Virus record (IMG/VR): IMGVR_UViG_3300038463_000730
Location: 124,001-188,000 of that record
Length of the DNA stretch: 64,000 nucleotides
Strand: one strand, 5' to 3'
Shown here: positions 38,126 through 52,398 of the stretch, piece by piece
Position numbering within the stretch: position 1 is the stretch's first letter
Layout of the letters: the number at the start of each line of letters is the position of its first letter
Translations under genes and position numbers: made by a program
Notes under the pieces: model-generated
Database searches by the model: none
The model's input: only the letters and a program-made list of their open reading frames with translations
Told to the model about the DNA's origin: nothing

Positions 38126-39718
38126 TTATCGTTCCTTGGTGAAAATGATTTCGTGTTTATGTCCCAATACTTCCTGCACCTCGCCATCAACAATCATGTG
38201 TTCATGGCCTGCCGAACTTCCGGTCACCTGGTTTATCTCTCCAGGATGCGTGCATTTCTTGCTAACGACAACAGTATGACTGTGTGGCAACAAACCAGGT
38301 ACCTGAGCCACCGACGTACGCAAATTGGTTGGCATTGGTGAAGCGTTACTGAAGACCCTTACATGATAAATCGGATCCGTCTTACGAACACGTTGGATCT
38401 TGAACTTCTGTCCGCCCATCATGCTCTGAAGTAAACGATTACGAGTGACAGACAGTACTTCGTACCGATACTCTTCAATACCGTTCTGATCGTATCGAAC
38501 AATCATGTCGCGATCTTTGATCGTCGGAACAGTCAAGCTCCAGCAATCAAAATTGCTTTGCGACTCCAATCCGGCATCACCCATTTTCAAGTCATCCTCG
38601 ACCGGTCCGAAACGTACCATGATTCGACGGTCTGCTCGACGTGGATTGAAGTACTGTTTCCAACCGATAACAAAGCCTGTTCCAAAACACTTTAGGCACC
38701 GGTCATCCGGATACTCACTCGATGGCAAGTAACAACTACAGATCACGCCTGTACGTTGACGATTGAGCAACACGATCGGTTCGCCCGTTACACTTAGCAA
38801 TATCTCTTGACGTTGTTCATTCTGTTCTTGCAAGGACAATCCCCTAACAACCATGCCTACTCCTGTAGACGGGTCTGCGTAATACTCTTCTCCACCGATA
38901 TAGCTACCTACGTTTCCACCTGTTAGCAATGTCAACGGATCCGTACGGTGCCATCCGGCAAAGTCGTACGACTGGAAACCAACATTCGATTCATCACTCG
39001 TTGCCAAATCAACGGTCAGAATGTCTTTGCGACGCTCCTTGTAACCATCGCGTGGATTGTAAGCGTAGTGGTCAATGTCGAACCGACACTGGGCCTCATA
39101 CGTATGACCGTTAAACTCTTCTGTTCCGACATACAACACTACGAATGGGTCCTGGTATCCATCACTACAATACCCATCGATGTTGTGAAAACTCTGAGGT
39201 GAATTGAGATAGCCACGGTAAGTAACGTTCGGTAGCGTAACGGAGTTGGCCGTTCGAGCATTGAATCGAATGATTTCGCCAAATAGATATCCTCCGACTC
39301 GTAGCATGCCGCTGGTTGGAAAGATGACCGAATCGATCAGCGGAATAGTCAGATCGTTGGCGCCGATATTGCGTAGTAGCAACGATATTGGCATCATGTA
39401 CAAATCTTTTGATGCCGATGGTAGTGAGCTTAGGTCCGTGATCGTAGGATCATACTCAACCGCATGCACGCCGAAGTGATAGATCTGACCTGGACGCAAG
39501 AACGGGATATCGATCTTCGTAATCAAAGACGTCGTGATGTACTTAGGGCCTTCGGCCCAGACGTGATCTTTGTTCTCAGCGTAATAGATGAGGTAAGCAA
39601 CTGAGTTGGAGGCCGTGTTAGGAAATGCCCGTGACCAATACACAGTAATGCTATAGCCATCGTTATTTGCGATAGCCTGATAGCAGCCATTGTAGATCGG
39701 GTTCATGTAATAGGGCAT
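38126..39718 (-). CDS. Neck / head-closure protein with FN3-like N-terminus, Cys cluster and His-rich tail
   Basis: LRPGQIYHFGVHAV (FN3-like); CSC...CLKCFGTGFVIGW; TIKDRDMIV...RYEVLSV; C-terminal HSH/HEH/HKH repeats. Confidence 0.65.
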   Translation of the reverse strand: MPYYMNPIYNGCYQAIANNDGYSITVYWSRAFPNTASNSVAYLIYYAENKDHVWAEGPKYITTSLITKIDIPFLRPGQIYHFGVHAVEYDPTITDLSSLPSASKDLYMMPISLLLRNIGANDLTIPLIDSVIFPTSGMLRVGGYLFGEIIRFNARTANSVTLPNVTYRGYLNSPQSFHNIDGYCSDGYQDPFVVLYVGTEEFNGHTYEAQCRFDIDHYAYNPRDGYKERRKDILTVDLATSDESNVGFQSYDFAGWHRTDPLTLLTGGNVGSYIGGEEYYADPSTGVGMVVRGLSLQEQNEQRQEILLSVTGEPIVLLNRQRTGVICSCYLPSSEYPDDRCLKCFGTGFVIGWKQYFNPRRADRRIMVRFGPVEDDLKMGDAGLESQSNFDCWSLTVPTIKDRDMIVRYDQNGIEEYRYEVLSVTRNRLLQSMMGGQKFKIQRVRKTDPIYHVRVFSNASPMPTNLRTSVAQVPGLLPHSHTVVVSKKCTHPGEINQVTGSSAGHEHMIVDGEVQEVLGHKHEIIFTKER

Positions 39719-39720
39719 CG

Positions 39721-40269
39721 TTACTCCGTTGATTCAACTTTTTCGGTAAGTTCCTCTTTCTTTTCCTTCTTCTCGTTTCCTTTTAGGTCATGATAACTCA
39801 GCATATCATCCACATATTCATCTGACTCTTTGTCACCAAACGTTTCAGCAATCCACTCGATTTGGTTCTGGAAGCCTTCTACTTCATACTCATTATCTAG
39901 GTACGAACCGTCATCCGCGCCCTTGGTAGGCTGAGTTCCGGTTGTTTGCTGGAGGTAGTGTGTAATCTCGTGAACGCCGTAGCCAAAGTCACGATAGAAG
40001 TCACCATCACAAAGTAGCCGGTAGTTGAAAAAGATGATTCCGTGCTCGGTTCGGGCCGAAACATCGATATCATCGAACGCCATCGGGATTGTCGCGATCT
40101 CATCGATCGGTACATCGTAGTCTTCAAAGACCTGAAGCATGACTTTATCAGTCTTCAGATACTCACGAAGCCTTCCGATAATCTTGTTCAACAGAACTGG
40201 AGAAAACTTCTTGACCTCTTCGAGACCGTATTTTTGCTTGTGTTCGGTCGGAGGATTTGTTTCCGGCAT
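39721..40269 (-). CDS. Putative zinc metallopeptidase (HExxH)
   Basis: GVHEITHYLQQ followed by YLDNEYEVEGF (candidate third-ligand Glu). Confidence 0.65.
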   Translation of the reverse strand: MPETNPPTEHKQKYGLEEVKKFSPVLLNKIIGRLREYLKTDKVMLQVFEDYDVPIDEIATIPMAFDDIDVSARTEHGIIFFNYRLLCDGDFYRDFGYGVHEITHYLQQTTGTQPTKGADDGSYLDNEYEVEGFQNQIEWIAETFGDKESDEYVDDMLSYHDLKGNEKKEKKEELTEKVESTE

Positions 40270-41228
40270 TAGAAATACCTTCTTGCTCTTAGGTGCCGTA
40301 GGCGCATAATGTTAGGATTGGTTGTGCTGATCGTGAGTGTACCGAGTCCCTTCGGGGCTGGACGAAACTGCTGCTTGATATATTTCAGTTGTTCAAAATA
40401 CTGAGCAAACTGTGTATTGTACTGTGAGCTAAGCATCTCCGCGACCGTTGGTGGCGTGAATGACAATCCGTTGTCCGTGATCTGGAATTCACGACCCTTC
40501 TCAAGCAATGCCTGAGCAGCCAACGCATACAAGCGGGCTCCCTTGACCAAGATGGTCAAGAACTGGTCAACGAACGGTGAATCCTCGAATGTGAACATGG
40601 TGAAAAACGGCGTCTCGTTGAAATCGCTTAGTGAAAGAGCACAGTACGTAACAAGCTGGTCCACCGTGAAAATATCACCGTCAACCCAACGCTCTTCGCC
40701 GTACTTATCGCGCATCTTGATTTTACCCTGACTCTTCAAGCTCGCGCGTAGGCCTTTGATAATTTTGTCAATGTTGAAGATTGCGGTCTGGGTATAGTTG
40801 AATCCAACGTCATCTCCAAGGTGAGCCCGCTCATCCGTCGTGATTGACTGAAGCTGAGTGTTTGCCACGACGAAGTTAAAAGCGCCTTGAATCGGGAAAC
40901 CGTTGACGAGCCCGGTCCACTGATCTGTGTAAACACCAATCGGGCCGTTGATATCGACGGTGTAGTCAAACCCGTAGACACCTGGTTCGACATGGTAAAC
41001 GCCGTGGCTACTCTTGCCTTTCGTAACTAAACCAGAAGGTTGAGTAATACTTACCATTGGGAATGAATCAAGACGGATCGGTTCCTTCGAACCATCCTTG
41101 AACTCTGCTCGTAATTGAACGGTATCAGTAACTTGTACCGTTTCTGAACGGCGACGCATTTGTGTCATCATGCCTCCTATTAGGCTCGGCTTACGCAGGG
41201 GATATGCTAAAGTTACCGAACGAAACAT
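40269..41228 (-). CDS. Head-tail adaptor / neck protein with N-terminal Ig-like domain
   Basis: Ig-like N-domain (GVYGFDYTV...GVYTDQW) plus helical C-domain (LSLSDFNETP...FQITDNGLSF...YFEQLKYIK). True start may be one of the ATGs near 41170. Confidence 0.6.
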   Translation of the reverse strand: MFRSVTLAYPLRKPSLIGGMMTQMRRRSETVQVTDTVQLRAEFKDGSKEPIRLDSFPMVSITQPSGLVTKGKSSHGVYHVEPGVYGFDYTVDINGPIGVYTDQWTGLVNGFPIQGAFNFVVANTQLQSITTDERAHLGDDVGFNYTQTAIFNIDKIIKGLRASLKSQGKIKMRDKYGEERWVDGDIFTVDQLVTYCALSLSDFNETPFFTMFTFEDSPFVDQFLTILVKGARLYALAAQALLEKGREFQITDNGLSFTPPTVAEMLSSQYNTQFAQYFEQLKYIKQQFRPAPKGLGTLTISTTNPNIMRLRHLRARRYF

Positions 41229-41535
41229 TCACTACGATTTCAATCAATTCGTTCGTCATAAGATCGGTATCGGGCAACGGCCATTGTGCTATCACGGCAT
41301 AGCTACCAATCGAGCCAGGACCGGTAGGCAATTGGAACATGTACTGATATACGCCAGTTGTAACTAGCTTCATTGTTTGTGGGAAATGAGCTGCCGTGGC
41401 ACCATTTGGTAAGTACACAGCTAGAATCTGTGGAGCCGAGCTTGGCGCGACAAGCAAGCCGTAACCATCCGTCACACCAACCGTGACGGTAGCTGTTTGA
41501 CCTGGACTATATTGTAGGATAGTGTGCATCAACAA
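41191..41535 (-). CDS. Small Ig-like virion protein
   Basis: PGQTATVTV.VTDGYG...GVYQYMFQLP..GSYAVIAQW; resembles the N-domain of the next gene. Confidence 0.65.
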   Translation of the reverse strand: MLMHTILQYSPGQTATVTVGVTDGYGLLVAPSSAPQILAVYLPNGATAAHFPQTMKLVTTGVYQYMFQLPTGPGSIGSYAVIAQWPLPDTDLMTNELIEIVVNVSFGNFSISPA

Positions 41536-41581
41536 AATACGCTAATAAGCATAGTTCCCTGGAATATCCAGGTATATACCT

Positions 41582-42055
41582 ATGAAGAAGGTTCCCGAAT
41601 TTAACACGAGTGCTAGAGCGGTTTCGATCCCGGCTTCTGGCCCGGAGGCATTACCGGTAACGGAGGCCGCGTCGAATGAAGAGACGTTTTGGATAACGAA
41701 TATTTCGAACCGAAATGTTAGTTTGGGTGACCTTAACCTCACAGTAAAAGCTTACATGACGGTCAATTTACTTGATTCTCGGCACTATCATTTGACGTCT
41801 GCGCAGCTTCACAAGTCTGCCAAGAGCGGCTCGATATATGCTAAACGAAACATGATTTTCGTACGGCTTATACCGCCAGAGAAGAACAAGATCCAATCAA
41901 TTTTGACCCAAGAGAACTGGATACCGAGCCGCGCTCGTTCGGCTATCCCGACAATTCAGCCGAACTATGATGAACTGAATTTGTCAGATGAGGCTTTCGC
42001 TGAAGAAGCATCCGAATTAGTTGAGAAAGACCGTAAACCACTTATCTCAAAGTAA
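41582..42055 (+). CDS. Hypothetical protein, 157 aa
   Basis: First of three tandem plus-strand ORFs; preceded by the palindrome GGTATATACC. Confidence 0.7.
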   Translation: MKKVPEFNTSARAVSIPASGPEALPVTEAASNEETFWITNISNRNVSLGDLNLTVKAYMTVNLLDSRHYHLTSAQLHKSAKSGSIYAKRNMIFVRLIPPEKNKIQSILTQENWIPSRARSAIPTIQPNYDELNLSDEAFAEEASELVEKDRKPLISK

Positions 42056-42080
42056 CCCGAAGCTGCGCTCAGGAGAATCG

Positions 42081-42257
42081 ATGTCGAAACCAAAATACTC
42101 AAATGATAAAATTCCAATGTTCATTGACTTTGATGAAATGGGAGAAGAAAAGGTTCAACATATACGTAAAATCTTGAAAAACTATAGTGAACTTAACAAG
42201 CTAATGGATCTCTGTCTAAAGAAAATAGAAGTAAGGGCTGAGGTCAAGAAGAAGTAA
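42081..42257 (+). CDS. Small hypothetical protein, 58 aa
   Basis: AGGAG ribosome-binding site before the ATG at 42081 (ORF track uses an upstream TTG at 42021). Confidence 0.6.
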   Translation: MSKPKYSNDKIPMFIDFDEMGEEKVQHIRKILKNYSELNKLMDLCLKKIEVRAEVKKK

Positions 42258-42283
42258 CGTAAGAAGCAACGAAGAAAGTAACC

Positions 42284-42733
42284 ATGCCAGACTATCCAAG
42301 AAAGCCGCCAGTGCCGGGTCCAGGAGCAATCGTTCCTCAGCCTCGACAGTCACAATCGAATGAGTTCCCAACGCCTGCGGGCCAGGAGTTCGGGCTGCTT
42401 ACTGTCCAGGATGTGAATAACATCTTAGAGGTCAACCAAAAGGCATTGACAATCTACCTAGAAGTAGAGAAGCAGAACGAAGATATCATCGATCACCTTG
42501 AGCGTGAAAGTGAGAAGCTGGATAAACTTGATCTCGTGCTATCTGAGCTACGTGATATCAAGGTTAAACAGAACGAGATTATCAAAACACTATCTGATCA
42601 GGCCGATGCGATCGAAGAGATCCATTCAAAAACAGGCGATTTGGACAAGAATTTTTTCCGTCTAATCATCATCCTTGGTTCGGCCGGGATCGGTACGGTA
42701 ATCACCGTTATTCAAGCGATTCTGCACCACTGA
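42284..42733 (+). CDS. Coiled-coil protein with C-terminal transmembrane helix (possible lysis/holin-type)
   Basis: Heptad-rich middle followed by FFRLIIILGSAGIGTVITVIQAIL. Confidence 0.6.
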   Translation: MPDYPRKPPVPGPGAIVPQPRQSQSNEFPTPAGQEFGLLTVQDVNNILEVNQKALTIYLEVEKQNEDIIDHLERESEKLDKLDLVLSELRDIKVKQNEIIKTLSDQADAIEEIHSKTGDLDKNFFRLIIILGSAGIGTVITVIQAILHH

Positions 42734-42967
42734 GCCTTGCGACTCTTCGAGTCGCTTGGCTATAACTGATCGAGTACTGGGCGGCCACGCATCTGGTTCA
42801 GGTTCGATCCAGTCTAGTTTACGCACGATCAATTCGACCAATGCGTGTTTGCACTGGTCACATAGGCAAAGCTCGGGCTTCTTGGATTCTATTCCAATGA
42901 ACCGTGCTAAACGCACGAGCCCTGTTGCTTCAGCACGGCTAAGTGTCTGGCGTGTAAGCCGGAGCAA
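42662..42967 (-). CDS. Hypothetical CxCxxCxH protein, in frame with and just after the csp stop codon
   Basis: TTG start with weak ribosome-binding site; fills the gap between csp and the plus-strand gene, which it overlaps by 72 nt. Confidence 0.4.
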   Translation of the reverse strand: MLRLTRQTLSRAEATGLVRLARFIGIESKKPELCLCDQCKHALVELIVRKLDWIEPEPDAWPPSTRSVIAKRLEESQGSVVQNRLNNGDYRTDPGRTKDDD

Positions 42968-42985
42968 CTTACTTGCGCTTTGCGG

Positions 42986-43219
42986 TCACTGAAGTGCCTG
43001 AACGTCAGTAGCTTTTGGCTGCCCTTTTTTATTCAACCCGAGGCCAAACGAGACGCGCTGATCTTTCTTGAGCGTCTTGAACCCCTGCGACGTGATATCG
43101 CTGAAATGTACGAATAAATCAGGTTGACCGTTGTCGCGCTGAATGAATCCGTAGCCCTTGCGGGAATCGAACCACACCACTATTCCGTTATATCTTGTAG
43201 GCGTATTTACTGTATTCAT
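42986..43219 (-). CDS. csp: Cold-shock domain protein (CspA family)
   Basis: [15 protein letters not shown] (RNP1), DLFVHFSDI (RNP2), [13 protein letters not shown]. Confidence 0.95.
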
Positions 43220-43809
43220 GCCGCATTCCTCTTGCTCATAAGTTTCAAAAAATCCTCTGGCATCTTGTTATTTTTAGTCAAATTACAAGACCTGCAAGAA
43301 GGACGAACATTATCAAGCGTATGTTCACCGCCTTTTGATAACGGAACATAGTGATCTATGTGCTCGAACGCTCCGCCACAATATACACATTCATTACCGT
43401 ATTTCTCAACAATATCGCTGTGCGTAAAATCATTTACAACAGCTGTTTTTTTTAGCGCCAATCTTTTATTAGAGTACATCCTATATTGATCAGGGTGGTC
43501 CAATTTATATTTTCGGACTCTCTCTTGTATAACAGGTTTGTGCCTTAGATAGTGGTTTCTTTTGATATTGTATAGAAGTTCTTTATTGTTGATCGCATAT
43601 ACCTTGTGTTTCTCGGCAAGAATTTCATAATTGATTTCGTGATAACATTTATCTGACTCAGCTTTATACTCTTTGTATCCTGGCTTCTGCCGATAGCTAT
43701 CCATGTATTGCTTAGTGCAATCACGACATTCAGTTGCCAGACCATCAGGCTTCGACTTATTCTTGTTGAAGTTATCTGATGGATTTTTGCACTTACTACA
43801 TGTCTTCAT
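43216..43809 (-). CDS. HNH endonuclease with N-terminal zinc ribbon
   Basis: CSKC...CRDC; [36 protein letters not shown]. Confidence 0.92.
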
Positions 43810-44105
43810 TAATCATCAACTTTCTTACCGTCAATCTCCAACACGTCGGTTCTCTTCGAGCTACCGGCAAAAAGCCGGTCCAACATCAAGATACCGAACT
43901 TCTGAATTTCGGCTCGTTCCTGTTCGTTGTCGCATCGAGCGAGTAACCGATCGGTTTGCTCAAGGATTCGACGAACATCCATTTCACAACCACAGTTGCG
44001 TGCAGTTTGAAGCAAAATTGCCCGTGTATCGCCTTCAGCCATAACAGGATGGGAATTTCCATCAAGCCCCTTAACATATTTGACTATTTTGGAGTTTCTT
44101 GCCAT
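43809..44105 (-). CDS. Hypothetical protein, 98 aa
   Basis: Coupled to the HNH gene by TAATG; preceded by CGATATATA. Confidence 0.65.
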   Translation of the reverse strand: MARNSKIVKYVKGLDGNSHPVMAEGDTRAILLQTARNCGCEMDVRRILEQTDRLLARCDNEQERAEIQKFGILMLDRLFAGSSKRTDVLEIDGKKVDD

Positions 44106-44145
44106 TACACTTTATATATCGATGTATTCGTAGTTATTGCAGCAG

Positions 44146-44457
44146 CTAGATGGCGAAAGATTTGTTCTTGAAACTAACCATCGGAACGTCGATTCCTTCG
44201 ACGTTTCGCTTTCCATCAAGTTCGTAGACCAGGATCCGATTATTTGGTGGAATAGTGGCGGGATAGACACCGATGATTCGTAATCTTCCGGCATGAACGA
44301 GTTCATGGTGGTTCGCACAGATAATAGCGAGATTGTAATTATGATTCGTTGTATTCTGTTCGGTACGCTCGATAATATGGTGCAGATGCAAAGCGTTCGG
44401 GTCGGTCATGCCGCAACCATCTATTTCGCAGCGGTTTTTGATCAATCGGGTCTTCAT
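44146..44457 (-). CDS. Small HNH-fold protein
   Basis: CEIDGC...LHLHHIIER...NLAIICANHHELVH. Confidence 0.8.
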   Translation of the reverse strand: MKTRLIKNRCEIDGCGMTDPNALHLHHIIERTEQNTTNHNYNLAIICANHHELVHAGRLRIIGVYPATIPPNNRILVYELDGKRNVEGIDVPMVSFKNKSFAI

Positions 44458-44500
44458 AACCGTCCATATAACGTCTGCCGAACGAAGTTACGTTAGCGCC

Positions 44501-44839
44501 TTACTGTTGAGCCCAGGCCTGCCAAGAAACGACGATCGACCCTGCCGATTGCAATCGAAGCCACACGAGCGGCGCAATCCGATTGTTGAACATCATATTC
44601 ACCGTCGTATCAGCCGAGTTTGTCTGACCATGTACCGTCACACCATCGAACGAGTATTCGACAATGCCAGAACCAAGATTGACGACCTGGAAGCCAGCCG
44701 TAGAAAATGGAATAACCAAGTCAGGCCCGTAACCATCCGGGGCTCCGCCACCGAACGTCGTCCAGGTAACAGTTGTCTTAGAGAAATAGTCTCTCTTAGG
44801 TCCATGTGTTTTTTGTGCAGGATAAATTACGAATCCCAT
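44501..44839 (-). CDS. Small beta-rich virion protein (contains DGYG)
   Basis: GGAG ribosome-binding site; VVNLGSGIVEYSFDGVTVHG. Confidence 0.7.
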   Translation of the reverse strand: MGFVIYPAQKTHGPKRDYFSKTTVTWTTFGGGAPDGYGPDLVIPFSTAGFQVVNLGSGIVEYSFDGVTVHGQTNSADTTVNMMFNNRIAPLVWLRLQSAGSIVVSWQAWAQQ

Positions 44840-44866
44840 GTTGTCTCCAAGTAATATGCTGCGAAA

Positions 44867-45364
44867 TTAGCTTAAGCGTCTAAAGTCTTTGCCTTCGCTA
44901 CATATAGTAAATAAATCGGGCGGCATGACATCAGCCGGATCGAGCCCATCGAATTCCGGTATTTTGTTTTGTGAATCTAACTCGATAATAAACTCAGAAC
45001 AAACCTCGGCAGACTTCGAATAGAATGGGTTATTGATTCCCATTTTCAATTTTCTACCAAGCAGAACTGGAATGTACCCGAATAGAGTAAGGACATCATA
45101 TCCTTGTCCTACGCGCTTTTCAGCCAACGCGACCTCATCACCAAGATCCGGAATGATCTCGAACTCCGCAACCATCGTGTGTGGAGCAACAAGCAACGCC
45201 TCTCTCGGGACGATCGCTACTCCTCCCCAAGCTGCATGTAGAAAGGATGGTGCGCCGTTGTACGTAATACCAATAGCAGAGTGTGCGATCGGGCTACCCT
45301 CGACCCACTGTATCATCCTGGAGAACATGTTTGTTGACGTGAATAAAGCTATTGTAACCATCAA
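44867..45364 (-). CDS. Permuted papain-like NlpC/P60 (YiiX/YaeF-type) enzyme
   Basis: His before Cys: SPIAHSAIG...VGQGYD...EVCSEFI...VMPPDL. Confidence 0.75.
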   Translation of the reverse strand: MMVTIALFTSTNMFSRMIQWVEGSPIAHSAIGITYNGAPSFLHAAWGGVAIVPREALLVAPHTMVAEFEIIPDLGDEVALAEKRVGQGYDVLTLFGYIPVLLGRKLKMGINNPFYSKSAEVCSEFIIELDSQNKIPEFDGLDPADVMPPDLFTICSEGKDFRRLS

Positions 45365-45371
45365 GACCTCT

Positions 45372-46346
45372 TTACATTCCTACCGTTATTTGTCTCGATA
45401 GAGTTAGTGCCCACACCAATTGCAAACCATTATGGCCTGAATTGTTCACTTGAACCTGGTGTACCCACTGTGGAAGTACTTTTTTTGGTAAGATAGCTGG
45501 AACGGACAAATCCATGTAGTTCGAGCCTAACAATGGATATTGAATAATGAAGTCTGCTAATGTTATCCGCATTGCGTATAGATTGTATGCGCCAGTTCCG
45601 GTAAGATTAGGCGTAATCGTTCCGACGCTAAGATTGTTGGCAGCCGGTGTCCAATTCCAATACCCTGTATTAGTAGGGCTCGGAACCGGCACAGCCGTTG
45701 CCATATTTACTTCGTAATTGGTATTTGCGCCTGGCACGATCACAACACCGCTAACCAGGTTAACATTGCCATATCCATCAGAGCCCGTGACAGCTGTTGC
45801 CGGAGCATACACCGAGTAACTTACCGTATCACCGAGAACAGCCCCATTGTATGTCATGTGGCCACCTGACAAATAGATCCAGTCATTGAACCCGAATGTC
45901 ACAGTATGTAATGTAGGACCGTATCCATCGTCATCACTGTGGTGTTGGAATAGCATTCCTCCACCAATTCCGTATTCCGGATCATCAGCTGCGCCAGCAA
46001 AACACAATTGCATCGTGTCTGGGAATAGGTTTGGAAGATTGCTTTGTCTGCCATCTGAAGTTTTTGGTTGAATTGCGGCATTACCATTTGCCTGGTATAC
46101 CGCTTCAAAATCAGCCGTATCGGCATCATTCTGTTCCTGCGTGTATCCGCCATCAATGATATCTTGTGGAACGGGTATCTGCCATAGTTGGCAAATATTC
46201 ACTTCTGGTCCATCATAGAACCATATTTGAGTAATTTGACCTTGTGAGTTGTCCCATTGCGGAATTCCGCCCTTCAGGATAAGGGCCGCTTTCCATGCTT
46301 GATATGCGTAATAACGCTGAGCCATAGTTTGAGGGAAAATAACCAT
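45372..46346 (-). CDS. Virion structural protein (two DGYG motifs)
   Basis: TAATG coupling with the upstream fibre gene places the start at 46346 (ORF track 46367); beta-rich. Confidence 0.7.
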   Translation of the reverse strand: MVIFPQTMAQRYYAYQAWKAALILKGGIPQWDNSQGQITQIWFYDGPEVNICQLWQIPVPQDIIDGGYTQEQNDADTADFEAVYQANGNAAIQPKTSDGRQSNLPNLFPDTMQLCFAGAADDPEYGIGGGMLFQHHSDDDGYGPTLHTVTFGFNDWIYLSGGHMTYNGAVLGDTVSYSVYAPATAVTGSDGYGNVNLVSGVVIVPGANTNYEVNMATAVPVPSPTNTGYWNWTPAANNLSVGTITPNLTGTGAYNLYAMRITLADFIIQYPLLGSNYMDLSVPAILPKKVLPQWVHQVQVNNSGHNGLQLVWALTLSRQITVGM

Positions 46347-49300
46347 TATGTCGCATCCTCTGTCCACTCGATGAATCCGCTTACCGATCCGCCCGTGACT
46401 GTTATTGAGTTCAAATTAATAGCGAGATTTTGCGCGACACCACGAAGCACAATTGGTTTATTATTCCTGATACCAAACTCCCAAATAATAACACTGTCTA
46501 ATACGCCAGTTAATGGGAATACCATTTTAGTAGATCTTATTGTTCCAACCGCTGCGCCAAGTCCTGTTGGATTAGCTGTGTATGCCGAAACAACAGCCGT
46601 TGCAGCTGCATCGTTAGCATCATGTGGGATAGCTGTTGCTGTGGTAGATGTTCCGCCAGTATCGGCGGCCGAACGTTTGATAAGAAGAATAGGAGTTGTT
46701 ACAGCAGTGGTCGCCAGACCAGTTAACTCAATTTTAGTTACACGAACTACTGTACTGGCACTTCCAATAATAGTTGCAATATCAGTAGCCGTTGCAGCCG
46801 TGGCAACTGTAAATGAAGCTGAGTATGTTTTACGAAGATGCTCTGCATTCTGTACTTGAAGCGATTGAACGGCATTGACCGGATTCGTGATCAACGTGCG
46901 AGCATCCGTTCCATCAGATGCACCCATCAAAACCGGGTTACCTGTTACGGCGGACCCTGAAGCGGCTGCACCGGTTGCAGTAAAACCATTGTTTGGACTG
47001 ATCGCTACTACAATAGCAGTATCGCCCGCAACTGCCGCCGTGCTACCAGCTTTAACAGTAGCGGTATTGTTACCATCTGTAATCTTCTGAAAACCAGGAC
47101 GCAAGATGGCGTCCATGGTTGGCATCAGGTTGGATCCGTCAGTGATTCTCTGAAAACCAGGACGCGAAATGCTGTCCATGGTTGGCATCAAGTTAGAGCC
47201 ATCCGTAATCTTCTGGAAACCGGGACGCAGAAGACCATCCATCATCGGCATCAGGTTCGAGCCATCGGTTATATGCATGTAACCGGCTCTTGTCGCGATA
47301 TCCATGGTTGGCATCGTGTTCGAACCGTCTGTTACTTTGACGGGCCAGGCATTAGATAATGTGTTTGGCGTGCCTTGTGAAAAACCATTGTTTGGACTGA
47401 TCGCTACTACCAGCGCAGTATCTCCCGCCACTGCCGCAGTGTTTGCTCCCTTGATAGTTGTAACGTTGCTACCGTCTGTAATCTTCTGAAAACCAGGACG
47501 AATAATGTTGTCCATGGTTGGCATGGTATTCGAACCATCCGTGATCTTCTGGAAACCGGGACGGATAACGTTATCCATCATTGGCATCAAGTTAGAGCCA
47601 TCGGTTATATGCATGTAACCGGCTCTAGTAGCGATGTCCATAGTAGGCATCGTGTTACTGCCATCCGTAATCTTGACTGGCCAACCGTTAGCTAACGTAT
47701 TAGGAGTGCCTTGGTTCGTCGCGCTTACTGTTACGGACAGAGCTACCGGTAACGGCGAGCCACCAATGGCACCGGCATTCCACTGAATGTTGGCAGTACC
47801 AGATGTATATGCAGAGGCACGAACACGCACTTGTGTAAATCCACCACAAGAAATGCCCATCGTTTGGTTAGTCGTAATATTTGAGACTAACGCTTGAGAG
47901 TTAAAGTTCCATGCCTGTAGCGCTACCCACGTACCATCACCGTTAGTTCCTTCGAACACGAGGGTTTCAGACCACGTTCCCAACACGTCAAATGTAACGG
48001 TTGAGCAACCTCCGGTTGTTGCGACAACCGTTCCGTTAAGAGCTGCGATACTGCCCGTTCCAGATTTATCAACTGAATTGAACGGGAGCGGTTCACCGTT
48101 AAAATCTTGATCAATTTGCACACGATCGATATTCTGGAAGAAAATATAATCGATATCAAAAGTCGTGCTAGATGCTGGAGCAGTTGCACCGTTAACGCTA
48201 CCTGCCGTAATATACAGAACTGTATACGGAGAAGGAATGTGGACAGAGTTTATCGCAACAACAATTCCATCAATTGATAGAGTAGCTTGATTCTGCGAAA
48301 TATCAATTTTGTATAGGTGATAAGTCGCGGTCGTGCTGCCGTTTGGAATTGTTACAAGAGTAGTTTGAGTGTCAGATGCCGTGTTAGCATAACACGTTAC
48401 AAAGTTTACTTGAGTGTTGGTTGTTCCTGAAAACTGTACCGTTACTTGCTGATTAGGAGTTAGTCCAACGACATCTTGAAAACCCATATAGAATGTCTGA
48501 TTTGCAATTCTCTGGCTAACCGCAACGTAAAACTGAACGCTATACGGTAGGAAATCCCCAAGACTTCTAATAGAAGTAGCCGAGTTAGCGGTCGTTCCGG
48601 CAGTCCAAGAAAAAATAGAAGATGCGACCGATAGAGTTGTACCGGTTCCGGTTACAGTCTGCCAGTTACTAACTACGCTGGCCGCTCCACCCGATGTTCC
48701 AGTGTAATTACTGTCTAACGTAAGTGCTGTATCGGACTCGATCGAACTTACTTGAACATAAAGTGTTTCCGAATCCGCCGTTTTCTTGATATACTGACCT
48801 ACATTCACTTGGGTTGTGAACGCAGTACCGGAACCAGTAACGGCAGTAGACCCGTTCGTAAACGTAACCGTTCCGGTAAGAGCAGTAGTTAGCGCGCTCC
48901 CAGTAAAGTCATCACGCAACGAACCTTCGTCTGTTAGAACGGTGCCGCGAGTTTGAAGATTTCCAAATGCGTCAATCGTTGGCGAACTAGTTCCAACAAT
49001 TACTGATGATGGATCTGGGTAGGAAGAATTGGTAAGCTGATCTGATTCTGTAACCGTTGCATTTGAATTTGGTGAAACGGTAACAACAAGCGCTGGATCA
49101 GTAGCAACGGCAGCTGTCGATGCTGGCTTGATGCGCACAGTTTGAATATTTGTGCCATCTGAACCACCAAACTGAGTAGCATAAAGTGGTGTTGCGGTAC
49201 CGATCGCAGCCGATGTTAGCGTTGATGGATCACTTATGTGCGAGCCACGTATTGTGCCGTTAGCCGTTCCACTTGTATATGCGGAAACCCTAACTCTTGT

Positions 49301-50086
49301 TTCGCCAGCTCCACCTACACCGATAATAGTCGCAGCAGTCGCCGTATTAGCCGATGCAAATACAATTGTTGTGGCGATGGCACCGTTTGTAGGATTGAAA
49401 TAGGTAGGGTTCCAAGTTGTGCCACCATCAAATGATGTTTCAGCAACTAACGTTCCAATCAAAGTACCGGCAGCAAGTTGCAAACCGATAGTCGTCTGAC
49501 CAGGATGAGTTAATGTTATCGCAGCATTCAACGCTCCCAATGCTCCGGTTGCCGTAACATCGGCAGCAGAAGTACTCAGAGAGTTGTTTGGCGAAATGGA
49601 AACTACAAGTGCAGGGTCGGTAGCAACGGCAGCGGTAGAAGCGGGCTTGACAGCGGCCGAGTTTCCACCTTGGTTGATTGTTGCGAGCCACGGGGTAGTG
49701 TTCGCCGTATTACCTGGCTGCACCGTCCACGTACCAGATTGGGTTGCTGCCACAGTGCCGGTCACGGTTGCATTCAAGTTTGCTGCTGTCGCCTGAACAA
49801 CAGTAAATGATCCTGTTCCGGCGTTAGCTGTGACAGTTCCGCTGACGGGCAAAGCAATACCGGCAGTTGCACCTTGAACAGTCAAAACACCACCAGAGCC
49901 GGTACCTGCTGTACCAGCTCCGACGATAACTTGCTGTCCAGAGGTATTTGTGCTGATGAAACGGGCATCCGTTCCATCATATCCTGCTACCGTAATAGCA
50001 GAAGTAGGAGCGACAGCGCCGTTGGTTGTTGCCAAGGCGTTGCCGCTCGCGTCGTACAATACTACATCTGGTGAAGAACCACTCAT
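46346..50086 (-). CDS. Long Thr/Ala-rich fibre protein with nested repeats and a lectin-like domain, 1246 aa
   Basis: Fibre motif GTVTFTNGSTAVTGSGTAFTTQV; YHLYKIDI...LSIDG (ConA-like); ITDGSN repeats. Confidence 0.75.
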   Translation of the reverse strand: MSGSSPDVVLYDASGNALATTNGAVAPTSAITVAGYDGTDARFISTNTSGQQVIVGAGTAGTGSGGVLTVQGATAGIALPVSGTVTANAGTGSFTVVQATAANLNATVTGTVAATQSGTWTVQPGNTANTTPWLATINQGGNSAAVKPASTAAVATDPALVVSISPNNSLSTSAADVTATGALGALNAAITLTHPGQTTIGLQLAAGTLIGTLVAETSFDGGTTWNPTYFNPTNGAIATTIVFASANTATAATIIGVGGAGETRVRVSAYTSGTANGTIRGSHISDPSTLTSAAIGTATPLYATQFGGSDGTNIQTVRIKPASTAAVATDPALVVTVSPNSNATVTESDQLTNSSYPDPSSVIVGTSSPTIDAFGNLQTRGTVLTDEGSLRDDFTGSALTTALTGTVTFTNGSTAVTGSGTAFTTQVNVGQYIKKTADSETLYVQVSSIESDTALTLDSNYTGTSGGAASVVSNWQTVTGTGTTLSVASSIFSWTAGTTANSATSIRSLGDFLPYSVQFYVAVSQRIANQTFYMGFQDVVGLTPNQQVTVQFSGTTNTQVNFVTCYANTASDTQTTLVTIPNGSTTATYHLYKIDISQNQATLSIDGIVVAINSVHIPSPYTVLYITAGSVNGATAPASSTTFDIDYIFFQNIDRVQIDQDFNGEPLPFNSVDKSGTGSIAALNGTVVATTGGCSTVTFDVLGTWSETLVFEGTNGDGTWVALQAWNFNSQALVSNITTNQTMGISCGGFTQVRVRASAYTSGTANIQWNAGAIGGSPLPVALSVTVSATNQGTPNTLANGWPVKITDGSNTMPTMDIATRAGYMHITDGSNLMPMMDNVIRPGFQKITDGSNTMPTMDNIIRPGFQKITDGSNVTTIKGANTAAVAGDTALVVAISPNNGFSQGTPNTLSNAWPVKVTDGSNTMPTMDIATRAGYMHITDGSNLMPMMDGLLRPGFQKITDGSNLMPTMDSISRPGFQRITDGSNLMPTMDAILRPGFQKITDGNNTATVKAGSTAAVAGDTAIVVAISPNNGFTATGAAASGSAVTGNPVLMGASDGTDARTLITNPVNAVQSLQVQNAEHLRKTYSASFTVATAATATDIATIIGSASTVVRVTKIELTGLATTAVTTPILLIKRSAADTGGTSTTATAIPHDANDAAATAVVSAYTANPTGLGAAVGTIRSTKMVFPLTGVLDSVIIWEFGIRNNKPIVLRGVAQNLAINLNSITVTGGSVSGFIEWTEDAT
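46982..47713 (-). repeat. Nested tandem repeat: 63-nt (21-aa) units inside a duplicated larger block
   Basis: (K/H/R)(I/V)TDGSN(T/L)MP(T/M)MDxxxR(P/A)G(F/Y)(Q/M): three full copies in block 1 and four in block 2; each block ends TAAVAGDTA(L/I)VVAISPNNGF. Confidence 0.9.
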
Positions 50087-50103
50087 CTTACCTACTTACT
50101 AAA

Positions 50104-51636
50104 TTATGGCGTGAGTTCTGTTACCAAAGCGTTTCCAGTTACACCGTTTGCCCAAGCAGCCTGAACAGCACCAGTGTAATCAACTGGAAGCTCCCAATAC
50201 ACATCCTGCATTAGCAAAGTTGTAAAGTTAGATGACGATGCAGTTCCGGTTCCGAGCAACACGTACATGTTCTTGTTTGTGTTGTTGTAGATTGCTGCGA
50301 ACTGACGGTTGGCGTTCGATGCCAAGATCGACGTAGTCGATGTTGCACCGGCTACCGTCGTGACAGCTGATGTGTTTGCCTTGTTCTGTGTGACCGATAC
50401 TGGGGTCATGCCAGAGATACCCTGGATCGTGACGACACCCGAGTTAGCTGTTCCAGCTGTACCGGCACCGATGACTGTTGCGTTCAAGTTTGCTGCGGTT
50501 GACTGAACTGCCAATACACGCAAGTTACCTGATGTATCCAATGACAACGCGCTCATCTGACCCGTTGTGTAGGTCGGAGCCGCAGTCGTTACCGAACCTG
50601 CACTCAAATTCGCATCCGCACCCGGTGCTGCACCGGTTGGATAGACACCGTCTACACGAAGCAATCCGCCTGTTGTCAATGACAATGAATAGATGTCGTT
50701 GTTAGTCAGACCTGATTCAGCAGCAGTCGTTACCAAACCACCTACATACGTAATCGAAGCTGGTGCCGCAGCTGCCGTTGCGCTTACTGAGGCGTTATTG
50801 AAGTTACCAGTTCCGGCGTTTGCCGTTACGGTTCCGCTGACTGGCTGAGTTACGTTTGAACCATCGACACGGAGCAATCCTGCCGTTGTCAATGACAACG
50901 CATACAGATCACCGCTAGTCAATCCTGATTCAACCGCAGTTGTAACAAGACCTCCAACATAGGTCGCCGAACCAGGAGCCGTTGTCGCTGTCGTGCTTAC
51001 CGAAGCGTTCGTTGCCGTAACAGTTCCGCTGACTGGAACCGGGGTTCCGGAAGCGTTACCTTGAATTGTTACCAGTCCCGAGCTAGCGCCGGAACCAGCT
51101 GCCGTTGTTCCAACAACTGTTGCGTTCAAGTTTGCAGCAGTAGCTTGTGCAACAGTGAATGAACCAGTTCCGGCATTCGCAGTAACAATTCCGCTGACCG
51201 GCTGTGTAACGTTTGATCCGTCAATACGGAGCAATCCAGTTGTAGTTAGTGATAGTGCATACAAATCACCGCTGGTCAAACCTGACTCGGTAGCTGTCGT
51301 AACTAAACCACCAACGTATGTTGCTGATCCAGGAGCAGCTGTTGCGGTCGTACTAACAGAGGCATTGTTTGCCGTTACAGTTCCGCTGACCGGGACCGGA
51401 GTACCGGAAGCGTTACCCTGAATGGTAAGCACGCCTCCAACACCAGTTCCGGCTGTACCGGCACCGACCAGCACTACACGACCTGAGGTATCAACGGTAA
51501 TGAAACGTGAATCTGTTCCATCCGAGCCTTCAACAAGAAGGCCGCGGTTACCAGTTGGTATTGAGTTGCCATTGATCGCGGCAAGCTCATAACCATCTGA
51601 GCTATATAAAACTGAGGCTGGTGATAGACCTGACAT
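50104..51636 (-). CDS. Repeat-containing fibre protein, paralogous N-terminus to 46346..50086
   Basis: Shares DGTD.RFI...GAGTAGTG.GGVLT.QG, PVSGTVTAN and ATAANLNATV with the neighbouring gene. Confidence 0.75.
   Translation of the reverse strand: MSGLSPASVLYSSDGYELAAINGNSIPTGNRGLLVEGSDGTDSRFITVDTSGRVVLVGAGTAGTGVGGVLTIQGNASGTPVPVSGTVTANNASVSTTATAAPGSATYVGGLVTTATESGLTSGDLYALSLTTTGLLRIDGSNVTQPVSGIVTANAGTGSFTVAQATAANLNATVVGTTAAGSGASSGLVTIQGNASGTPVPVSGTVTATNASVSTTATTAPGSATYVGGLVTTAVESGLTSGDLYALSLTTAGLLRVDGSNVTQPVSGTVTANAGTGNFNNASVSATAAAAPASITYVGGLVTTAAESGLTNNDIYSLSLTTGGLLRVDGVYPTGAAPGADANLSAGSVTTAAPTYTTGQMSALSLDTSGNLRVLAVQSTAANLNATVIGAGTAGTANSGVVTIQGISGMTPVSVTQNKANTSAVTTVAGATSTTSILASNANRQFAAIYNNTNKNMYVLLGTGTASSSNFTTLLMQDVYWELPVDYTGAVQAAWANGVTGNALVTELTP
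50646..51420 (-). repeat. Three copies of a ~50-aa module
   Basis: NASVS.TA..AP.S.TYVGGLVTTA.ESGLT..D.Y.LSLTT.GLLR.DG occurs three times. Confidence 0.85.
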
Positions 51637-51651
51637 TGTAGTATCCTTGGT

Positions 51652-52398
51652 TTACGAAATGCTTCTTGTTCGAGTAGTTTCGAAGATAAAGTTTTCGTAA
51701 GTAATGTTATCGCTTACAGTATGGGCTATCGTGACACCATCTGTATTGTATACCTTCCAAGTGATAGTTGTTGGAACAATATTTGACCACACAATGTCCT
51801 GTTCTACTATCTTTTTAGCCATTGTATCATCAACATACCAAATTACGGACGTTGGAAACATGATACCTGGCGGCGAAATGACTTTGTACGCTCCGGACAC
51901 AAACCCGTCAGCCGGACCTTCATCGATAAAGTGAATAAGTTGACGGAGCGTTTCGTGTTCAGCCGGATTGATTAGATTCTTATCAAGATCACTAATCGCA
52001 CCTTGAACATTCGTGCTAGTAATATTGATTGACTTAGTCGGATCGAAACCGACCTGACCTGCTCCGGCTGGCCAGATAAAATTGACAAAACCACCGGTAG
52101 ATGAGTTGATCGGCTCAACCGTTGTGAATGTTGTGCCGTTCAGAACCGCATCAATAGTGAAATAGCCATCTGCTGACCCCGTTCCATAGAATTGGACTCG
52201 GTCGCCGGATTCAACCGGATGGTCACCAGATGGCCAAGTCAGATCTTGGTCATCGACAAGTGTAATGACGACAATGTTACTAACAGATGTCGTAGATATG
52301 AGCGGAACGGCTGCTAAGTATACACTATAGCCATCAGAGGCTAGTCTAGGTACCTCGGCAATTTCTGCTTCTAATACATCTGATTTCGCAATTGCCAT
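51652..52398 (-). CDS. Virion structural protein (two DGY motifs)
   Basis: ITSTNVQGAISDL (fibre-type motif); HETLRQLIHFIDEGP. Confidence 0.7.
   Translation of the reverse strand: MAIAKSDVLEAEIAEVPRLASDGYSVYLAAVPLISTTSVSNIVVITLVDDQDLTWPSGDHPVESGDRVQFYGTGSADGYFTIDAVLNGTTFTTVEPINSSTGGFVNFIWPAGAGQVGFDPTKSINITSTNVQGAISDLDKNLINPAEHETLRQLIHFIDEGPADGFVSGAYKVISPPGIMFPTSVIWYVDDTMAKKIVEQDIVWSNIVPTTITWKVYNTDGVTIAHTVSDNITYENFIFETTRTRSIS

What the first reader, a model, noticed from the sequence alone, without database searches (positions are those of the whole stretch)
40269..51636. DGY appears to be gained site by site at pre-existing turns in paralog pairs
Two paralog pairs differ at the motif. The Ig-like domain of 41191..41535 has VTDGYG where the similar domain of 40269..41228 has FKDGSK. 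Fibre 50104..51636 starts SPASVLYSSDGYELA where its paralog 46346..50086 has SPDVVLYDASGNALA. This fits gain or loss of a short tag by point mutation rather than spread of a repeated domain. The alignments are by eye.
Basis: partly seen in the sequence, partly recalled or inferred. Interest (0 to 1): 0.6.

Follow-up and report, generated by a model that had tools for sequence, protein, structure and literature searches.

The report
DGY loop motif in huge-phage virion proteins

Summary
The sequences are as described. The two fibres share a 122-residue N-terminal domain (55% identity). The two Ig-like domains are homologous only by profile comparison (92.6%) and predicted structure. In both pairs DGY faces the other state at the same glycine turn.

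DGY is a real motif at protein level. The window has 26 against 3.5-4.9 expected, the top tripeptide of all. It is order-specific, in frame and uses ordinary codons. It is confined to virion proteins. Five complete genomes of the clade (the window's and four relatives) are enriched 2.3-4.8 fold; four outgroups, phage G among them, are not.

The two cited DGY sites are not recent gains. 20 of 22 members of the small Ig protein family keep DGY in that loop, and 51 of 100 fibre N-termini keep it at that column. Each paralog has its own orthologs.

Turnover is real elsewhere. 52 of 85 sites occur in under 15% of orthologs, while density per protein stays at 10-40 times expectation. The window has itself lost a DGY that 19 of 23 family members carry.

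Function is unknown. My inference is an exposed-loop tag read by a clade-specific partner. A conserved glycosyltransferase operon beside the structural genes makes virion glycosylation the leading candidate, but nothing shows it.

The parts
41191..41535 (-). P0002, a 114-aa stand-alone Ig-like virion protein
   Evidence: AlphaFold on an alignment of 22 family members gives pLDDT 88 and a 7-strand sandwich. Foldseek matches Ig V-set and macroglobulin MG4 domains. Orthologs are 26-42% identical, and every one of the 22 members carries at least one DGY against 0.05 expected.
41461..41469 (-). DGY (residues 23-25) of P0002, in the loop after strand 14-20
   Evidence: The model shows a loop at residues 23-27 bridged by residues 22 and 28. 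20 of 22 family members have 1-3 DGY in this loop, at shifting positions.
40269..41171 (-). P0001: an Ig-like N-domain plus a helical C-domain. The start is revised from 41228 to about 41171.
   Evidence: 28 orthologous loci at 49-56% identity start at the position of M20/M21. The N-domain has pLDDT 82-88 and the same strand pattern as P0002. The C-domain (residues 179-318) matches a phage G ORF that has no Ig domain.
41088..41096 (-). DGS of P0001, the turn equivalent to the DGY of P0002
   Evidence: hhalign aligns the two turns. In orthologs this is a D-x-x-G-N-P hairpin with a hypervariable x-x (GS, GT, GF, QF, AL, MS and others). DGY occurs there in 1 of 23.
40827..40835 (-). DER of P0001: a DGY site lost in the window's phage
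   Evidence: 19 of 23 family members have DGY here, in the conserved stretch just before HLGDDPGF. Two have DGH and one DGF. The site lies in the low-confidence linker between the two domains.
50104..51636 (-). P0004, a 510-aa fibre-like protein with a shared N-terminal domain and three internal repeats
   Evidence: Translation; N-terminal domain homology to P0003; 113 database relatives.
51589..51597 (-). DGY (residues 14-16) of P0004
   Evidence: DGY occupies this column in 18 of 26 fibre N-termini from the window and related loci, and in 51 of 100 database clusters. The central G is nearly invariant.
46346..50086 (-). P0003, a 1246-aa tail fibre without any DGY
   Evidence: phrog_1980 tail fiber, E 8e-13. 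16 DG dipeptides but no DGY, and eight ITDGSN repeat units.
50039..50047 (-). SGN (residues 14-16) of P0003, the turn equivalent to the DGY of P0004
   Evidence: BLASTP alignment. The P0003 type groups with two orthologs from other phages at 95/87 support, and all three lack DGY. The same type (YD..GN.L) recurs in the database.
38126..39718 (-). 530-aa virion protein with four DGY
   Evidence: Site occupancy in the 19-member family is 12/19, 8/19, 18/19 and 19/19, at 45-51% overall identity.
57258..57974 (-). 238-aa protein just upstream of the major head protein, with one DGY
   Evidence: DGY is kept in 59 of 60 family members at 43-56% identity. It occupies the position of phage G's capsid decoration gene.
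51652..52398 (-). 248-aa protein with two DGY
   Evidence: Occupancy is 9/9 and 8/9 in the family alignment.
26598..32474 (-). 1958-aa virion protein with five DGY
   Evidence: Two sites are conserved (10/11, 9/11) and three are unique to the window in the locus alignment. One of those three (residue 621) is DGY in 3 of 4 complete relatives by pairwise alignment. All 11 family members carry 4-9 DGY against 0.33 expected.
21979..24795 (-). Tail sheath (938 aa) with two DGY in an N-terminal insertion domain
   Evidence: phrog_2839 covers residues 764-938. The DGYGNP at residue 197 aligns with DANGN in three of four complete relatives; the site at residue 173 aligns there with unrelated states (NALNQ and similar). 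Both sites are shared with G002.
1271..5086 (-). Baseplate wedge-like protein (1271 aa) with two DGY in its lineage-specific middle part
   Evidence: phrog_6. VDGYGR aligns with VDQYGR, VDSYGR, VDEFGR and VDSLGR in four relatives, a one-step gain at a D-x-x-G turn.
56137..57153 (-). Major head protein, which has no DGY
   Evidence: phrog_2522, E 2e-73. 52% identical to phage G gp27. No DGY in 60 family members.

Best explanation
DGY is a short motif, selected at the protein level, in exposed loops of the accessory parts of virion proteins: Ig-like domains, fibre N-termini, and insertions in the sheath and baseplate. It is specific to one clade of phage-G-like myoviruses of about 430-480 kb.

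The two paralog contrasts in the finding are old differences held by purifying selection. The P0002 family and the P0004-type fibres keep DGY at a glycine turn. The P0001 family has a freely varying D-x-x-G hairpin at that turn, and the P0003-type fibres have (N/S)-G-N.

Across the clade the motif is renewed in three ways: by substitutions at D-x-x-G or x-G turns, by loop insertions (some with tandem DGY), and by losses. Each DGY-bearing protein family keeps roughly 10-40 times the expected number.

How it works is inferred, not shown. The enrichment is exact and order-specific. It does not depend on fold context. It is limited to virion proteins and to one clade. From this I infer that the tripeptide is read as a unit by a clade-specific partner. 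My leading candidate (about 0.25-0.3) is that it is an acceptor tag for virion glycosylation by the conserved GT4, GT2 and NDP-sugar epimerase/dehydratase operon that abuts the structural genes. The next candidate (about 0.25) is direct ligand binding by Tyr-rich, CDR-like loops.
For: Shown:
- Enrichment and specificity: 26 against 3.5-4.9 in the window, 72 against 18-23 in the genome. 54 against 7.5 in the structural block and 18 against 10.7 elsewhere. DGF, DGW, NGY, EGY, SGY, DAY and the five other orders of D, G and Y are all at expectation.
- Protein level: 26 of 31 coding-strand DNA matches are in frame, and synonymous codon use at the sites equals genome usage. The enrichment holds in genomes whose GC ranges from 31% to 48%.
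- Clade specificity: the ratio is 2.3-4.8 (rank 1-19 of about 8000 tripeptides) in five complete genomes. It is 0.9-1.5 (rank above 1600) in phage G, LR745208, Tunturi_5 and Rctr197k.
- Conservation of the cited sites.
- Turnover with kept density: 85 sites, of which 52 are below 15% occupancy and 9 at or above 80%.
- Loop position.
- DGY falls in lineage-specific domains rather than the cores shared with outgroups.

For the glycosylation lead:
- The operon GT4, GT2, unknown 339 aa, GT2, epimerase lies directly next to the DGY-rich giant structural proteins.
- It is syntenic in four complete relatives and 28 IMG/VR loci.
- It has no orthologs in the four outgroups.
- The number of GT2 genes rises with DGY density in the adjacent proteins (rho 0.55, p 0.008, not corrected for relatedness).
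Against: - No modification has been observed, and no enzyme is known to recognise DGY. No paper in the held library describes the motif.
- Phage glycosyltransferases often act on DNA or on host surface glycans instead.
- Relatives that lack both GT2 genes are still strongly enriched (G001 at 2.3 fold; 2.7 DGY per 1000 residues in the neighbouring proteins).
- The conserved 339-aa operon protein looks membrane-anchored, which fits envelope work as well as virion work.
- Nearly invariant sites (59/60, 19/19) could equally be structural.
- Nine of the window's 26 sites are DGYG, several in D-x-x-G hairpins of Ig-like domains. Part of the pattern may therefore be inheritance within one diversified domain superfamily.
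Confidence: 0.6

Rival explanations
1. One reading: after gene duplication in this phage's lineage, one member of each paralog pair gained (or the other lost) DGY by point mutation at a pre-existing turn.
For: The pairs are homologous, and the motif faces DGS or SGN at a turn with the same glycine. SGN to DGY and DGS to DGY need only a few substitutions.
Against: Each paralog has its own orthologs throughout the clade, and these carry the same state. The P0002 loop has DGY in 20 of 22 family members. The fibre column has it in 51 of 100. The P0003 type forms its own supported clade. The difference therefore predates the clade's radiation. The Ig pair is only about 18% identical.
Confidence: 0.1
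2. A generic structural preference: Asp-Gly makes a tight beta-turn and a following Tyr packs on it, so any beta-rich virion proteome would show it.
For: The sites are at turns and loops. The central G is often kept in orthologs: 28-60% of alternative states against 9% background.
Against: NGY, DGF, DGW and EGY are not enriched. Four related huge phages with comparable virion proteins show no enrichment. P0003 has 16 DG turns and no DGY.
Confidence: 0.1
3. Spread of a repeated domain: the excess comes from duplicated modules that each carry DGY.
For: 10 of the genome's 72 DGY lie in one repeat unit of a 1956-aa protein outside the window. A relative has a fibre with three DGY per repeat of about 95 aa. 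Nine window sites share the DGYG form.
Against: The flanks of the window's 26 sites are unrelated and lie in 13 proteins. Orthologous positions in relatives carry other residues, for example DANGN and DQYGR. Removing the repeat still leaves 62 against 18-23 expected.
Confidence: 0.1
4. A signal in DNA or RNA (GAYGGNTAY) rather than in protein.
For: 31 matches on the coding strand and none on the other strand of the window.
Against: 26 of the matches inside ORFs are in frame 0 and only 3 are out of frame. All codon variants are used in genome-wide proportions. The motif persists across genomes with 31-48% GC.
Confidence: 0.02
5. Direct binding: DGY-bearing loops form Tyr-rich, CDR-like surfaces that stick weakly to a host or environmental polymer, with no modification involved.
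For: In the P0002 family DGY clusters in one loop (the one after the second strand) of a V-set-like Ig fold, in up to three copies there and four per protein. Asp, Gly and Tyr are typical of binding loops (my own knowledge). Carriers are peripheral virion parts.
Against: Binding surfaces usually show a bias in composition, not in residue order, yet the other orders of D, G and Y are at expectation. The motif also lies in a linker and in many unrelated proteins.
Confidence: 0.25

Closest known systems
Glycosylation sequons on surface proteins, and the shifting 'glycan shield' of enveloped viruses (N-x-S/T; the Bacteroidota O-glycosylation motif D-(S/T)-(A/I/L/V/M/T)). This comparison rests on my own knowledge.
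   Same: A short exact motif is enriched in exposed proteins. It does not depend on fold context. Some sites are fixed and others move, while the number per protein is kept.
   Different: No modification is shown here. DGY is not a known sequon. The acceptor would have to be Tyr or Asp. The proteins fold in the cytoplasm.
Virion glycosylation in mycobacteriophages by phage-encoded glycosyltransferases (Freeman et al. 2023, as described in PMC12619734).
   Same: Glycosyltransferase genes sit beside structural genes, and virion proteins are the target.
   Different: There the glycans are reported at the C-termini of the capsid and tail-tube subunits. Here the major head protein has no DGY, and the motif is scattered through accessory domains.
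Tyrosine O-glycosylation of S-layer proteins of Gram-positive bacteria (beta-Glc or beta-Gal linked to Tyr; PMC2943079).
   Same: It is a precedent for Tyr as a glycan acceptor on a surface array.
   Different: That transfer happens during secretion and uses an oligosaccharyltransferase. No DGY consensus is reported, and I could not read the primary paper.
Accessory Ig-like domains on tailed-phage virions, and the D-x-x-G-N-P hairpin of bacterial Ig-like (Big/invasin-type) domains. This comparison rests on my own knowledge.
   Same: P0002, the N-domain of P0001 and the sheath insertion are of this kind. DGY fills the two variable positions of the hairpin.
   Different: A preference for G-Y at those positions, and the same tripeptide recurring in unrelated contexts, is not a known feature of these domains.
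RGD-type short linear motifs in viral capsid loops. This comparison rests on my own knowledge.
   Same: An exact tripeptide in exposed loops, gained and lost by a few substitutions.
   Different: RGD usually sits in one receptor-binding protein. DGY is spread over at least 13 virion proteins in the window.

Membership tests
Paralogous fibre N-terminal domain (P0003 and P0004) | Significant pairwise sequence similarity over the domain | tested here: met
   55% identity over 122 residues, E 1e-15.
Paralogous Ig-like domains (P0001 N-domain and P0002) | Significant pairwise sequence similarity | tested here: not met
   BLASTP E 1.5.
Paralogous Ig-like domains (P0001 N-domain and P0002) | Profile-profile similarity and the same predicted strand topology | tested here: met
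   hhalign gives 92.6% probability and E 4.6e-7 over 61 columns. The strand patterns match, with the motif in the same loop.
Ig-like beta-sandwich domain | A seven-strand sandwich that matches solved Ig-like folds | tested here: met
   P0002 has pLDDT 88. Foldseek matches V-set and MG4 domains with TM up to 0.66. The P0001 N-domain matches filamin and macroglobulin domains.
Recent site-by-site gain within the paralog pair | Orthologs of the DGY-bearing paralog mostly lack DGY at that site | tested here: not met
   20 of 22 family members (P0002 loop) and 51 of 100 (fibre column) carry DGY.
Clade-wide motif turnover with kept density | Many low-occupancy sites, yet a stable excess per protein in every ortholog | tested here: met
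   52 of 85 sites are below 15% occupancy. Families keep 1-6 DGY per protein against 0.04-0.33 expected.
Gain at pre-existing turns | Orthologs without DGY keep the central glycine | tested here: inconclusive
   Among 59 rare sites, G is kept in 14, 20 lie in insertions and G is not kept in 25. The central G frequency is 28% against 9% background. Alignment in loops is uncertain.
Repeated-domain spread | DGY copies embedded in mutually similar flanks | tested here: not met
   Not met for the window's 26 sites. Met only for one 1956-aa protein outside the window.
DNA-level motif | No preference for the reading frame, and fixed bases | tested here: not met
   26 in frame against 3 out of frame. 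Codon use equals genome usage.
Protein glycosylation sequon | Motif enriched in exposed parts of the target proteins | tested here: met
Protein glycosylation sequon | A cognate glycosyltransferase is encoded and co-occurs with the enrichment | tested here: inconclusive
   The operon is conserved in the enriched clade and absent from four outgroups. Genomes that lack the GT2 genes are still enriched, and the correlation is not corrected for relatedness.
Protein glycosylation sequon | A glycan is found attached at the motif | not testable with these tools
   This needs mass spectrometry of virions or of co-expressed proteins.
Other Tyr- or Asp-directed modification (sulfation, isoaspartate methylation, hydroxylation) | A matching enzyme is conserved in the enriched genomes | tested here: not met
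   No Sulfotransfer_3 and no PCMT in the five genomes. One weak 2OG-Fe(II) oxygenase match in one genome only. Only these three families were tried.

The most novel reading that the evidence does not exclude
DGY is a sequon. The phage's own sugar operon (GT4, GT2 and NDP-sugar epimerase/dehydratase) would attach a glycan to the Tyr of exposed DGY loops. That would give these huge phages a glycan coat whose attachment sites shift between lineages while their number is kept, as in the glycan shields of enveloped viruses. It would be the first defined sequon for virion glycosylation in a phage, and a cytoplasmic Tyr-linked one.
Probability: 0.22. Interest if true: 0.85.

Novelty: new variant of a known kind. 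Interest (0 to 1): 0.6.

Why it matters
An exact tripeptide that ranks first among about 8000 in the virion proteins of a whole clade of uncultured huge phages, and is absent from their nearest outgroups, points to a shared property of the virion surface that annotation misses. Nearly all of these proteins have no family match.

If the motif is a modification tag or a binding element, it gives a simple sequence handle. It could predict which parts of these virions are exposed. It could guide the search for the partner enzyme or ligand. It would also let one study how a surface code is maintained while its individual sites move.

For the finding as given, the lesson is methodological. A difference between paralogs in one genome cannot be read as a gain or a loss until the orthologs of each paralog are examined.

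Tried and rejected
- Megablast of the region against cultured phages found no match.
- PHROGs and Pfam on about 45 window proteins named only the baseplate wedge, sheath, major head protein, one tail fibre and an HNH endonuclease.
- Literature searches for a DGY motif in phages found nothing relevant. The primary paper on tyrosine O-glycosylation is not held.
- The DNA-level motif was rejected on frame and codon usage.
- Local composition was rejected by the permutation counts and block shuffles.
- A generic turn preference was rejected by the neighbour tripeptides and the four outgroup genomes.
- The prohead-protease site idea was rejected by reasoning: the motif occurs in the sheath, fibres and baseplate, and in tandem inside folded Ig loops.
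- Diversity-generating retroelement mutagenesis was rejected: all four Gly codons are used, and the sites are conserved.
- A single-sequence scan for the GT4 gene in IMG/VR found nothing; the alignment-based scan worked.
- The conserved 339-aa operon protein has no PDB or PHROG relative.
- No sulfotransferase, PCMT or consistent 2OG oxygenase was found in the five genomes.
- The whole-protein model of P0001 is poor (pLDDT 62), so only its N-domain was used.
- The fibre tree has 12 of 23 forks unresolved and no root, so the direction of change for the main split is left open.
- No alternative genetic code, reads tool or complex prediction was needed.


Full report
**What the window is.** All genes in the region lie on the - strand. 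The window is bases 124001-188000 of a single 434,688-base virus record. It holds the structural module of a huge myovirus:
- a baseplate wedge-like protein at 1271..5086 and a tail sheath at 21979..24795;
- a tail fibre at 46346..50086;
- the major head protein at 56137..57153, which is 52% identical to gp27 of Bacillus phage G.

IMG/VR holds 392 relatives; in the best 80, the head protein is 80-87% identical (one is 100%), and several lie on contigs of 340-480 kb. Most other proteins have no family match.

**The observation.** The two fibres share an N-terminal domain, 55% identical over 122 residues (E 1e-15). D14-G15-Y16 of P0004 aligns with S14-G15-N16 of P0003.

The two Ig-like sequences are not similar by BLASTP (E 1.5). 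I collected 28 loci with orthologs of P0001 and 21 orthologs of P0002. A profile-profile comparison of the P0002 family with the N-domain of the P0001 family gives 92.6% probability, E 4.6e-7.

AlphaFold gives a confident 7-strand sandwich for P0002 (pLDDT 88), with DGY in the loop at residues 23-27 after the second strand. The N-domain of P0001 (pLDDT 82-88) has the same strand pattern and the same loop. Foldseek puts both among Ig V-set, macroglobulin and filamin domains. Orthologs show that P0001 most likely starts at M20/M21, window 41171 or 41168.

**Is DGY more than chance?** Yes.
- In a greedy ORF set of the window there are 26 DGY. Composition predicts 3.5 and a first-order Markov model 4.9 (p 2e-11). 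It is the most over-represented tripeptide.
- The whole genome has 72 against 18-23, again first.
- 54 of these lie in the structural block at 60-190 kb, where 7.5 are expected. The rest of the genome has 18 against 10.7.
- The signal is exact. DGF, DGW, NGY, EGY, SGY and DAY are at or below expectation. The five other orders of D, G and Y count 6-11 against 7.5. Shuffling residues within blocks of 6-20 gives 8-10.
- It is a protein signal. Of 31 matches to GAYGGNTAY on the coding strand, 26 are in frame and 3 out of frame; the other strand has none. Synonymous codons at the sites are used in genome-wide proportions.

**How wide is it?** I fetched four complete relatives and four outgroups.
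- The relatives are enriched 2.3, 4.8, 3.7 and 2.9 fold, with DGY ranking 19th, 1st, 1st and 2nd, although their GC ranges from 31% to 43% (the window's genome has 48%).
- Phage G (1.5 fold, rank 1649), LR745208 (1.2), Tunturi_5 (1.5) and Rctr197k (0.9) are not enriched.
- In 80 loci around the head gene, 347 DGY occur where 49 are expected.

The trait therefore belongs to one clade.

**The two cited sites in their families.**
- P0002 family: 20 of 22 members (the window's copy and 21 orthologs) have one to three DGY in the loop after the second strand. The two exceptions have one elsewhere, so every member has at least one in about 115 residues (0.05 expected). The position shifts by two to ten residues, and some members have up to three copies in the loop.
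- P0001 family: the equivalent turn is a D-x-x-G-N-P hairpin whose two middle residues vary freely. DGY appears there in 1 of 23.
- The same P0001 family has a different DGY, just before a conserved HLGDDPGF stretch, in 19 of 23 members. The window's copy has DER there, which is a loss.
- Fibres: DGY fills the column in 18 of 26 distinct N-termini from the window and related loci and in 51 of 100 database clusters. The next most common states are DGT (8), SGN (6) and DGI (4), and the central glycine is nearly invariant.
- In a tree built without the motif columns, the label needs at least two changes. P0003 groups with two orthologs that also lack DGY (support 95/87). A DGT sequence is nested among DGY sequences.

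Without a root, the direction of the main fibre split stays open.

**Turnover elsewhere.** In 11 ortholog families covering 26-64 kb of the window I found 85 alignment positions that hold DGY in at least one member. 52 are held by fewer than 15% of members and 9 by 80% or more. Yet every member of a DGY-bearing family has about 10-40 times the expected number. Families such as the major head protein have none in 50-60 members.

Of 59 rare sites, 20 lie in insertions, 14 keep the central glycine in most other members and 25 do not. Where DGY is absent, D and G occur at 28% each against 5% and 9% background.

Against four complete genomes, some changes are clean:
- VDGYGR in the baseplate protein where relatives have VDQYGR, VDSYGR, VDEFGR and VDSLGR;
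- LDGYGN in the sheath where relatives have LDANGN.

Of the window's 15 sites with many orthologs, 12 are shared by at least 40% of them.

Loop insertions, losses and strong conservation account for the rest. One repeat unit in a 1956-aa protein outside the window supplies 10 of the genome's 72.

**Where the motif sits.** The cores shared with outgroups carry almost none. The sheath sites are at residues 173 and 197, while the conserved sheath core is residues 750-938. The baseplate sites lie between the conserved ends. The Ig-like domain of P0001 is missing from its phage G homolog. Contexts include Ig-like hairpins, a disordered linker, dockerin-like DxNGDG loops and fibre repeats.

**Mechanism.** The following are shown: an exact, ordered, clade-specific motif that does not depend on fold context; its restriction to peripheral virion parts; fixed sites alongside moving sites. 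From this I infer that the tripeptide is recognised as a unit by something specific to this clade.

The one conserved candidate I found is a sugar operon directly beside the DGY-rich giant structural proteins. It comprises GT4, GT2, an unknown 339-aa protein, a second GT2 and an NDP-sugar epimerase/dehydratase, followed by a TubZ-like tubulin.
- It is syntenic in all four complete relatives and in 28 IMG/VR loci.
- It has no ortholog in the four outgroups.
- The number of GT2 genes rises with DGY density in the adjacent proteins (rho 0.55, p 0.008). This is not corrected for relatedness, and loci without GT2 are still strongly enriched.

Precedents exist for phage virion glycosylation (PMC12619734, citing Freeman et al. 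2023) and for glycans linked to Tyr on bacterial S-layers (PMC2943079). Sulfotransferase, isoaspartate methyltransferase and 2OG oxygenase families are not conserved in these genomes.

I put glycosylation at about 0.22-0.3 and direct binding by CDR-like Tyr loops at about 0.25. The remainder goes to a structural or unknown role.

**Verdict.** However, the two examples given are ancient, conserved paralog differences rather than gains caught in the act. The phenomenon behind them is, as far as the held literature shows, undescribed.

Noticed in passing
G000:C1:107363-114582 (about 10-17 kb before the window start): A conserved operon lies directly next to the DGY-rich structural genes: GT4, GT2, an unknown 339-aa protein with a probable N-terminal membrane helix, a second GT2 and an NDP-sugar epimerase/dehydratase, followed by a TubZ/PhuZ-like tubulin. 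It is syntenic in 28 related loci.
   Followed up: partly
window 40827..40835: The window's P0001 has DER where 19 of 23 family members have a conserved DGY.
   Followed up: yes
window 41168..41228: The first ATG of the 40269..41228 ORF is probably not the start. Orthologs begin at the position of M20/M21, which removes the overlap with 41191..41535.
   Followed up: yes
window 46346..50086: The 1246-aa fibre has eight ITDGSN repeat units with Met/Pro-rich spacers, 16 DG dipeptides and not one DGY. Not every DG turn in a virion protein is converted.
   Followed up: partly
window 43216..43809: An HNH endonuclease gene (Pfam HNH, E 4e-11) lies inside the structural module, among small ORFs and + strand ORFs that have few orthologs in relatives.
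   Followed up: no
G000:C1:74385-80255 (+ strand, outside the window): A 1956-aa protein has 13 DGY, 10 of them in a repeat of the form GTLG..Q-DGY-V.TW. This is the one place in the genome where the motif did spread by duplication.
   Followed up: partly
window 21979..24795, compared with G002:C1:268601-271075: Both sheath DGY sites are shared only with G002, the relative with the most divergent head protein (80%). Three closer relatives have other states there (DANGN at the second site). This could be mosaic exchange of the sheath insertion domain, an ancestral state lost in the others, or convergence.
   Followed up: no
window 40269..41171, compared with phage G 99243..99797: Only the helical C-domain of P0001 has a phage G homolog (26% identity, E 3e-11). 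The Ig-like N-domain appears to have been added in this clade.
   Followed up: partly
G000-G004 whole records: Genomes whose head proteins are at least 80% identical differ in GC from 31% to 48%, an unusually large shift in composition for such close capsid genes.
   Followed up: no
L083:9289-9986 and L086:9294-9985: Two relatives carry two tandem P0002-like genes. The second copy lacks DGY in the usual loop but has one in another loop.
   Followed up: partly
phage G record JN638751.1, 316-343 kb: Phage G is not enriched overall, but four giant proteins there repeat a DGYWYVRG unit, giving 11 DGY in one 20-kb bin. This is a domain repeat, unlike the pattern in the window.
   Followed up: partly
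window, + strand: GAYGGNTAY does not occur at all on the + strand of the 64-kb window, where about 4 are expected from base counts. I take this to be chance plus codon constraints on the opposite strand.
   Followed up: no
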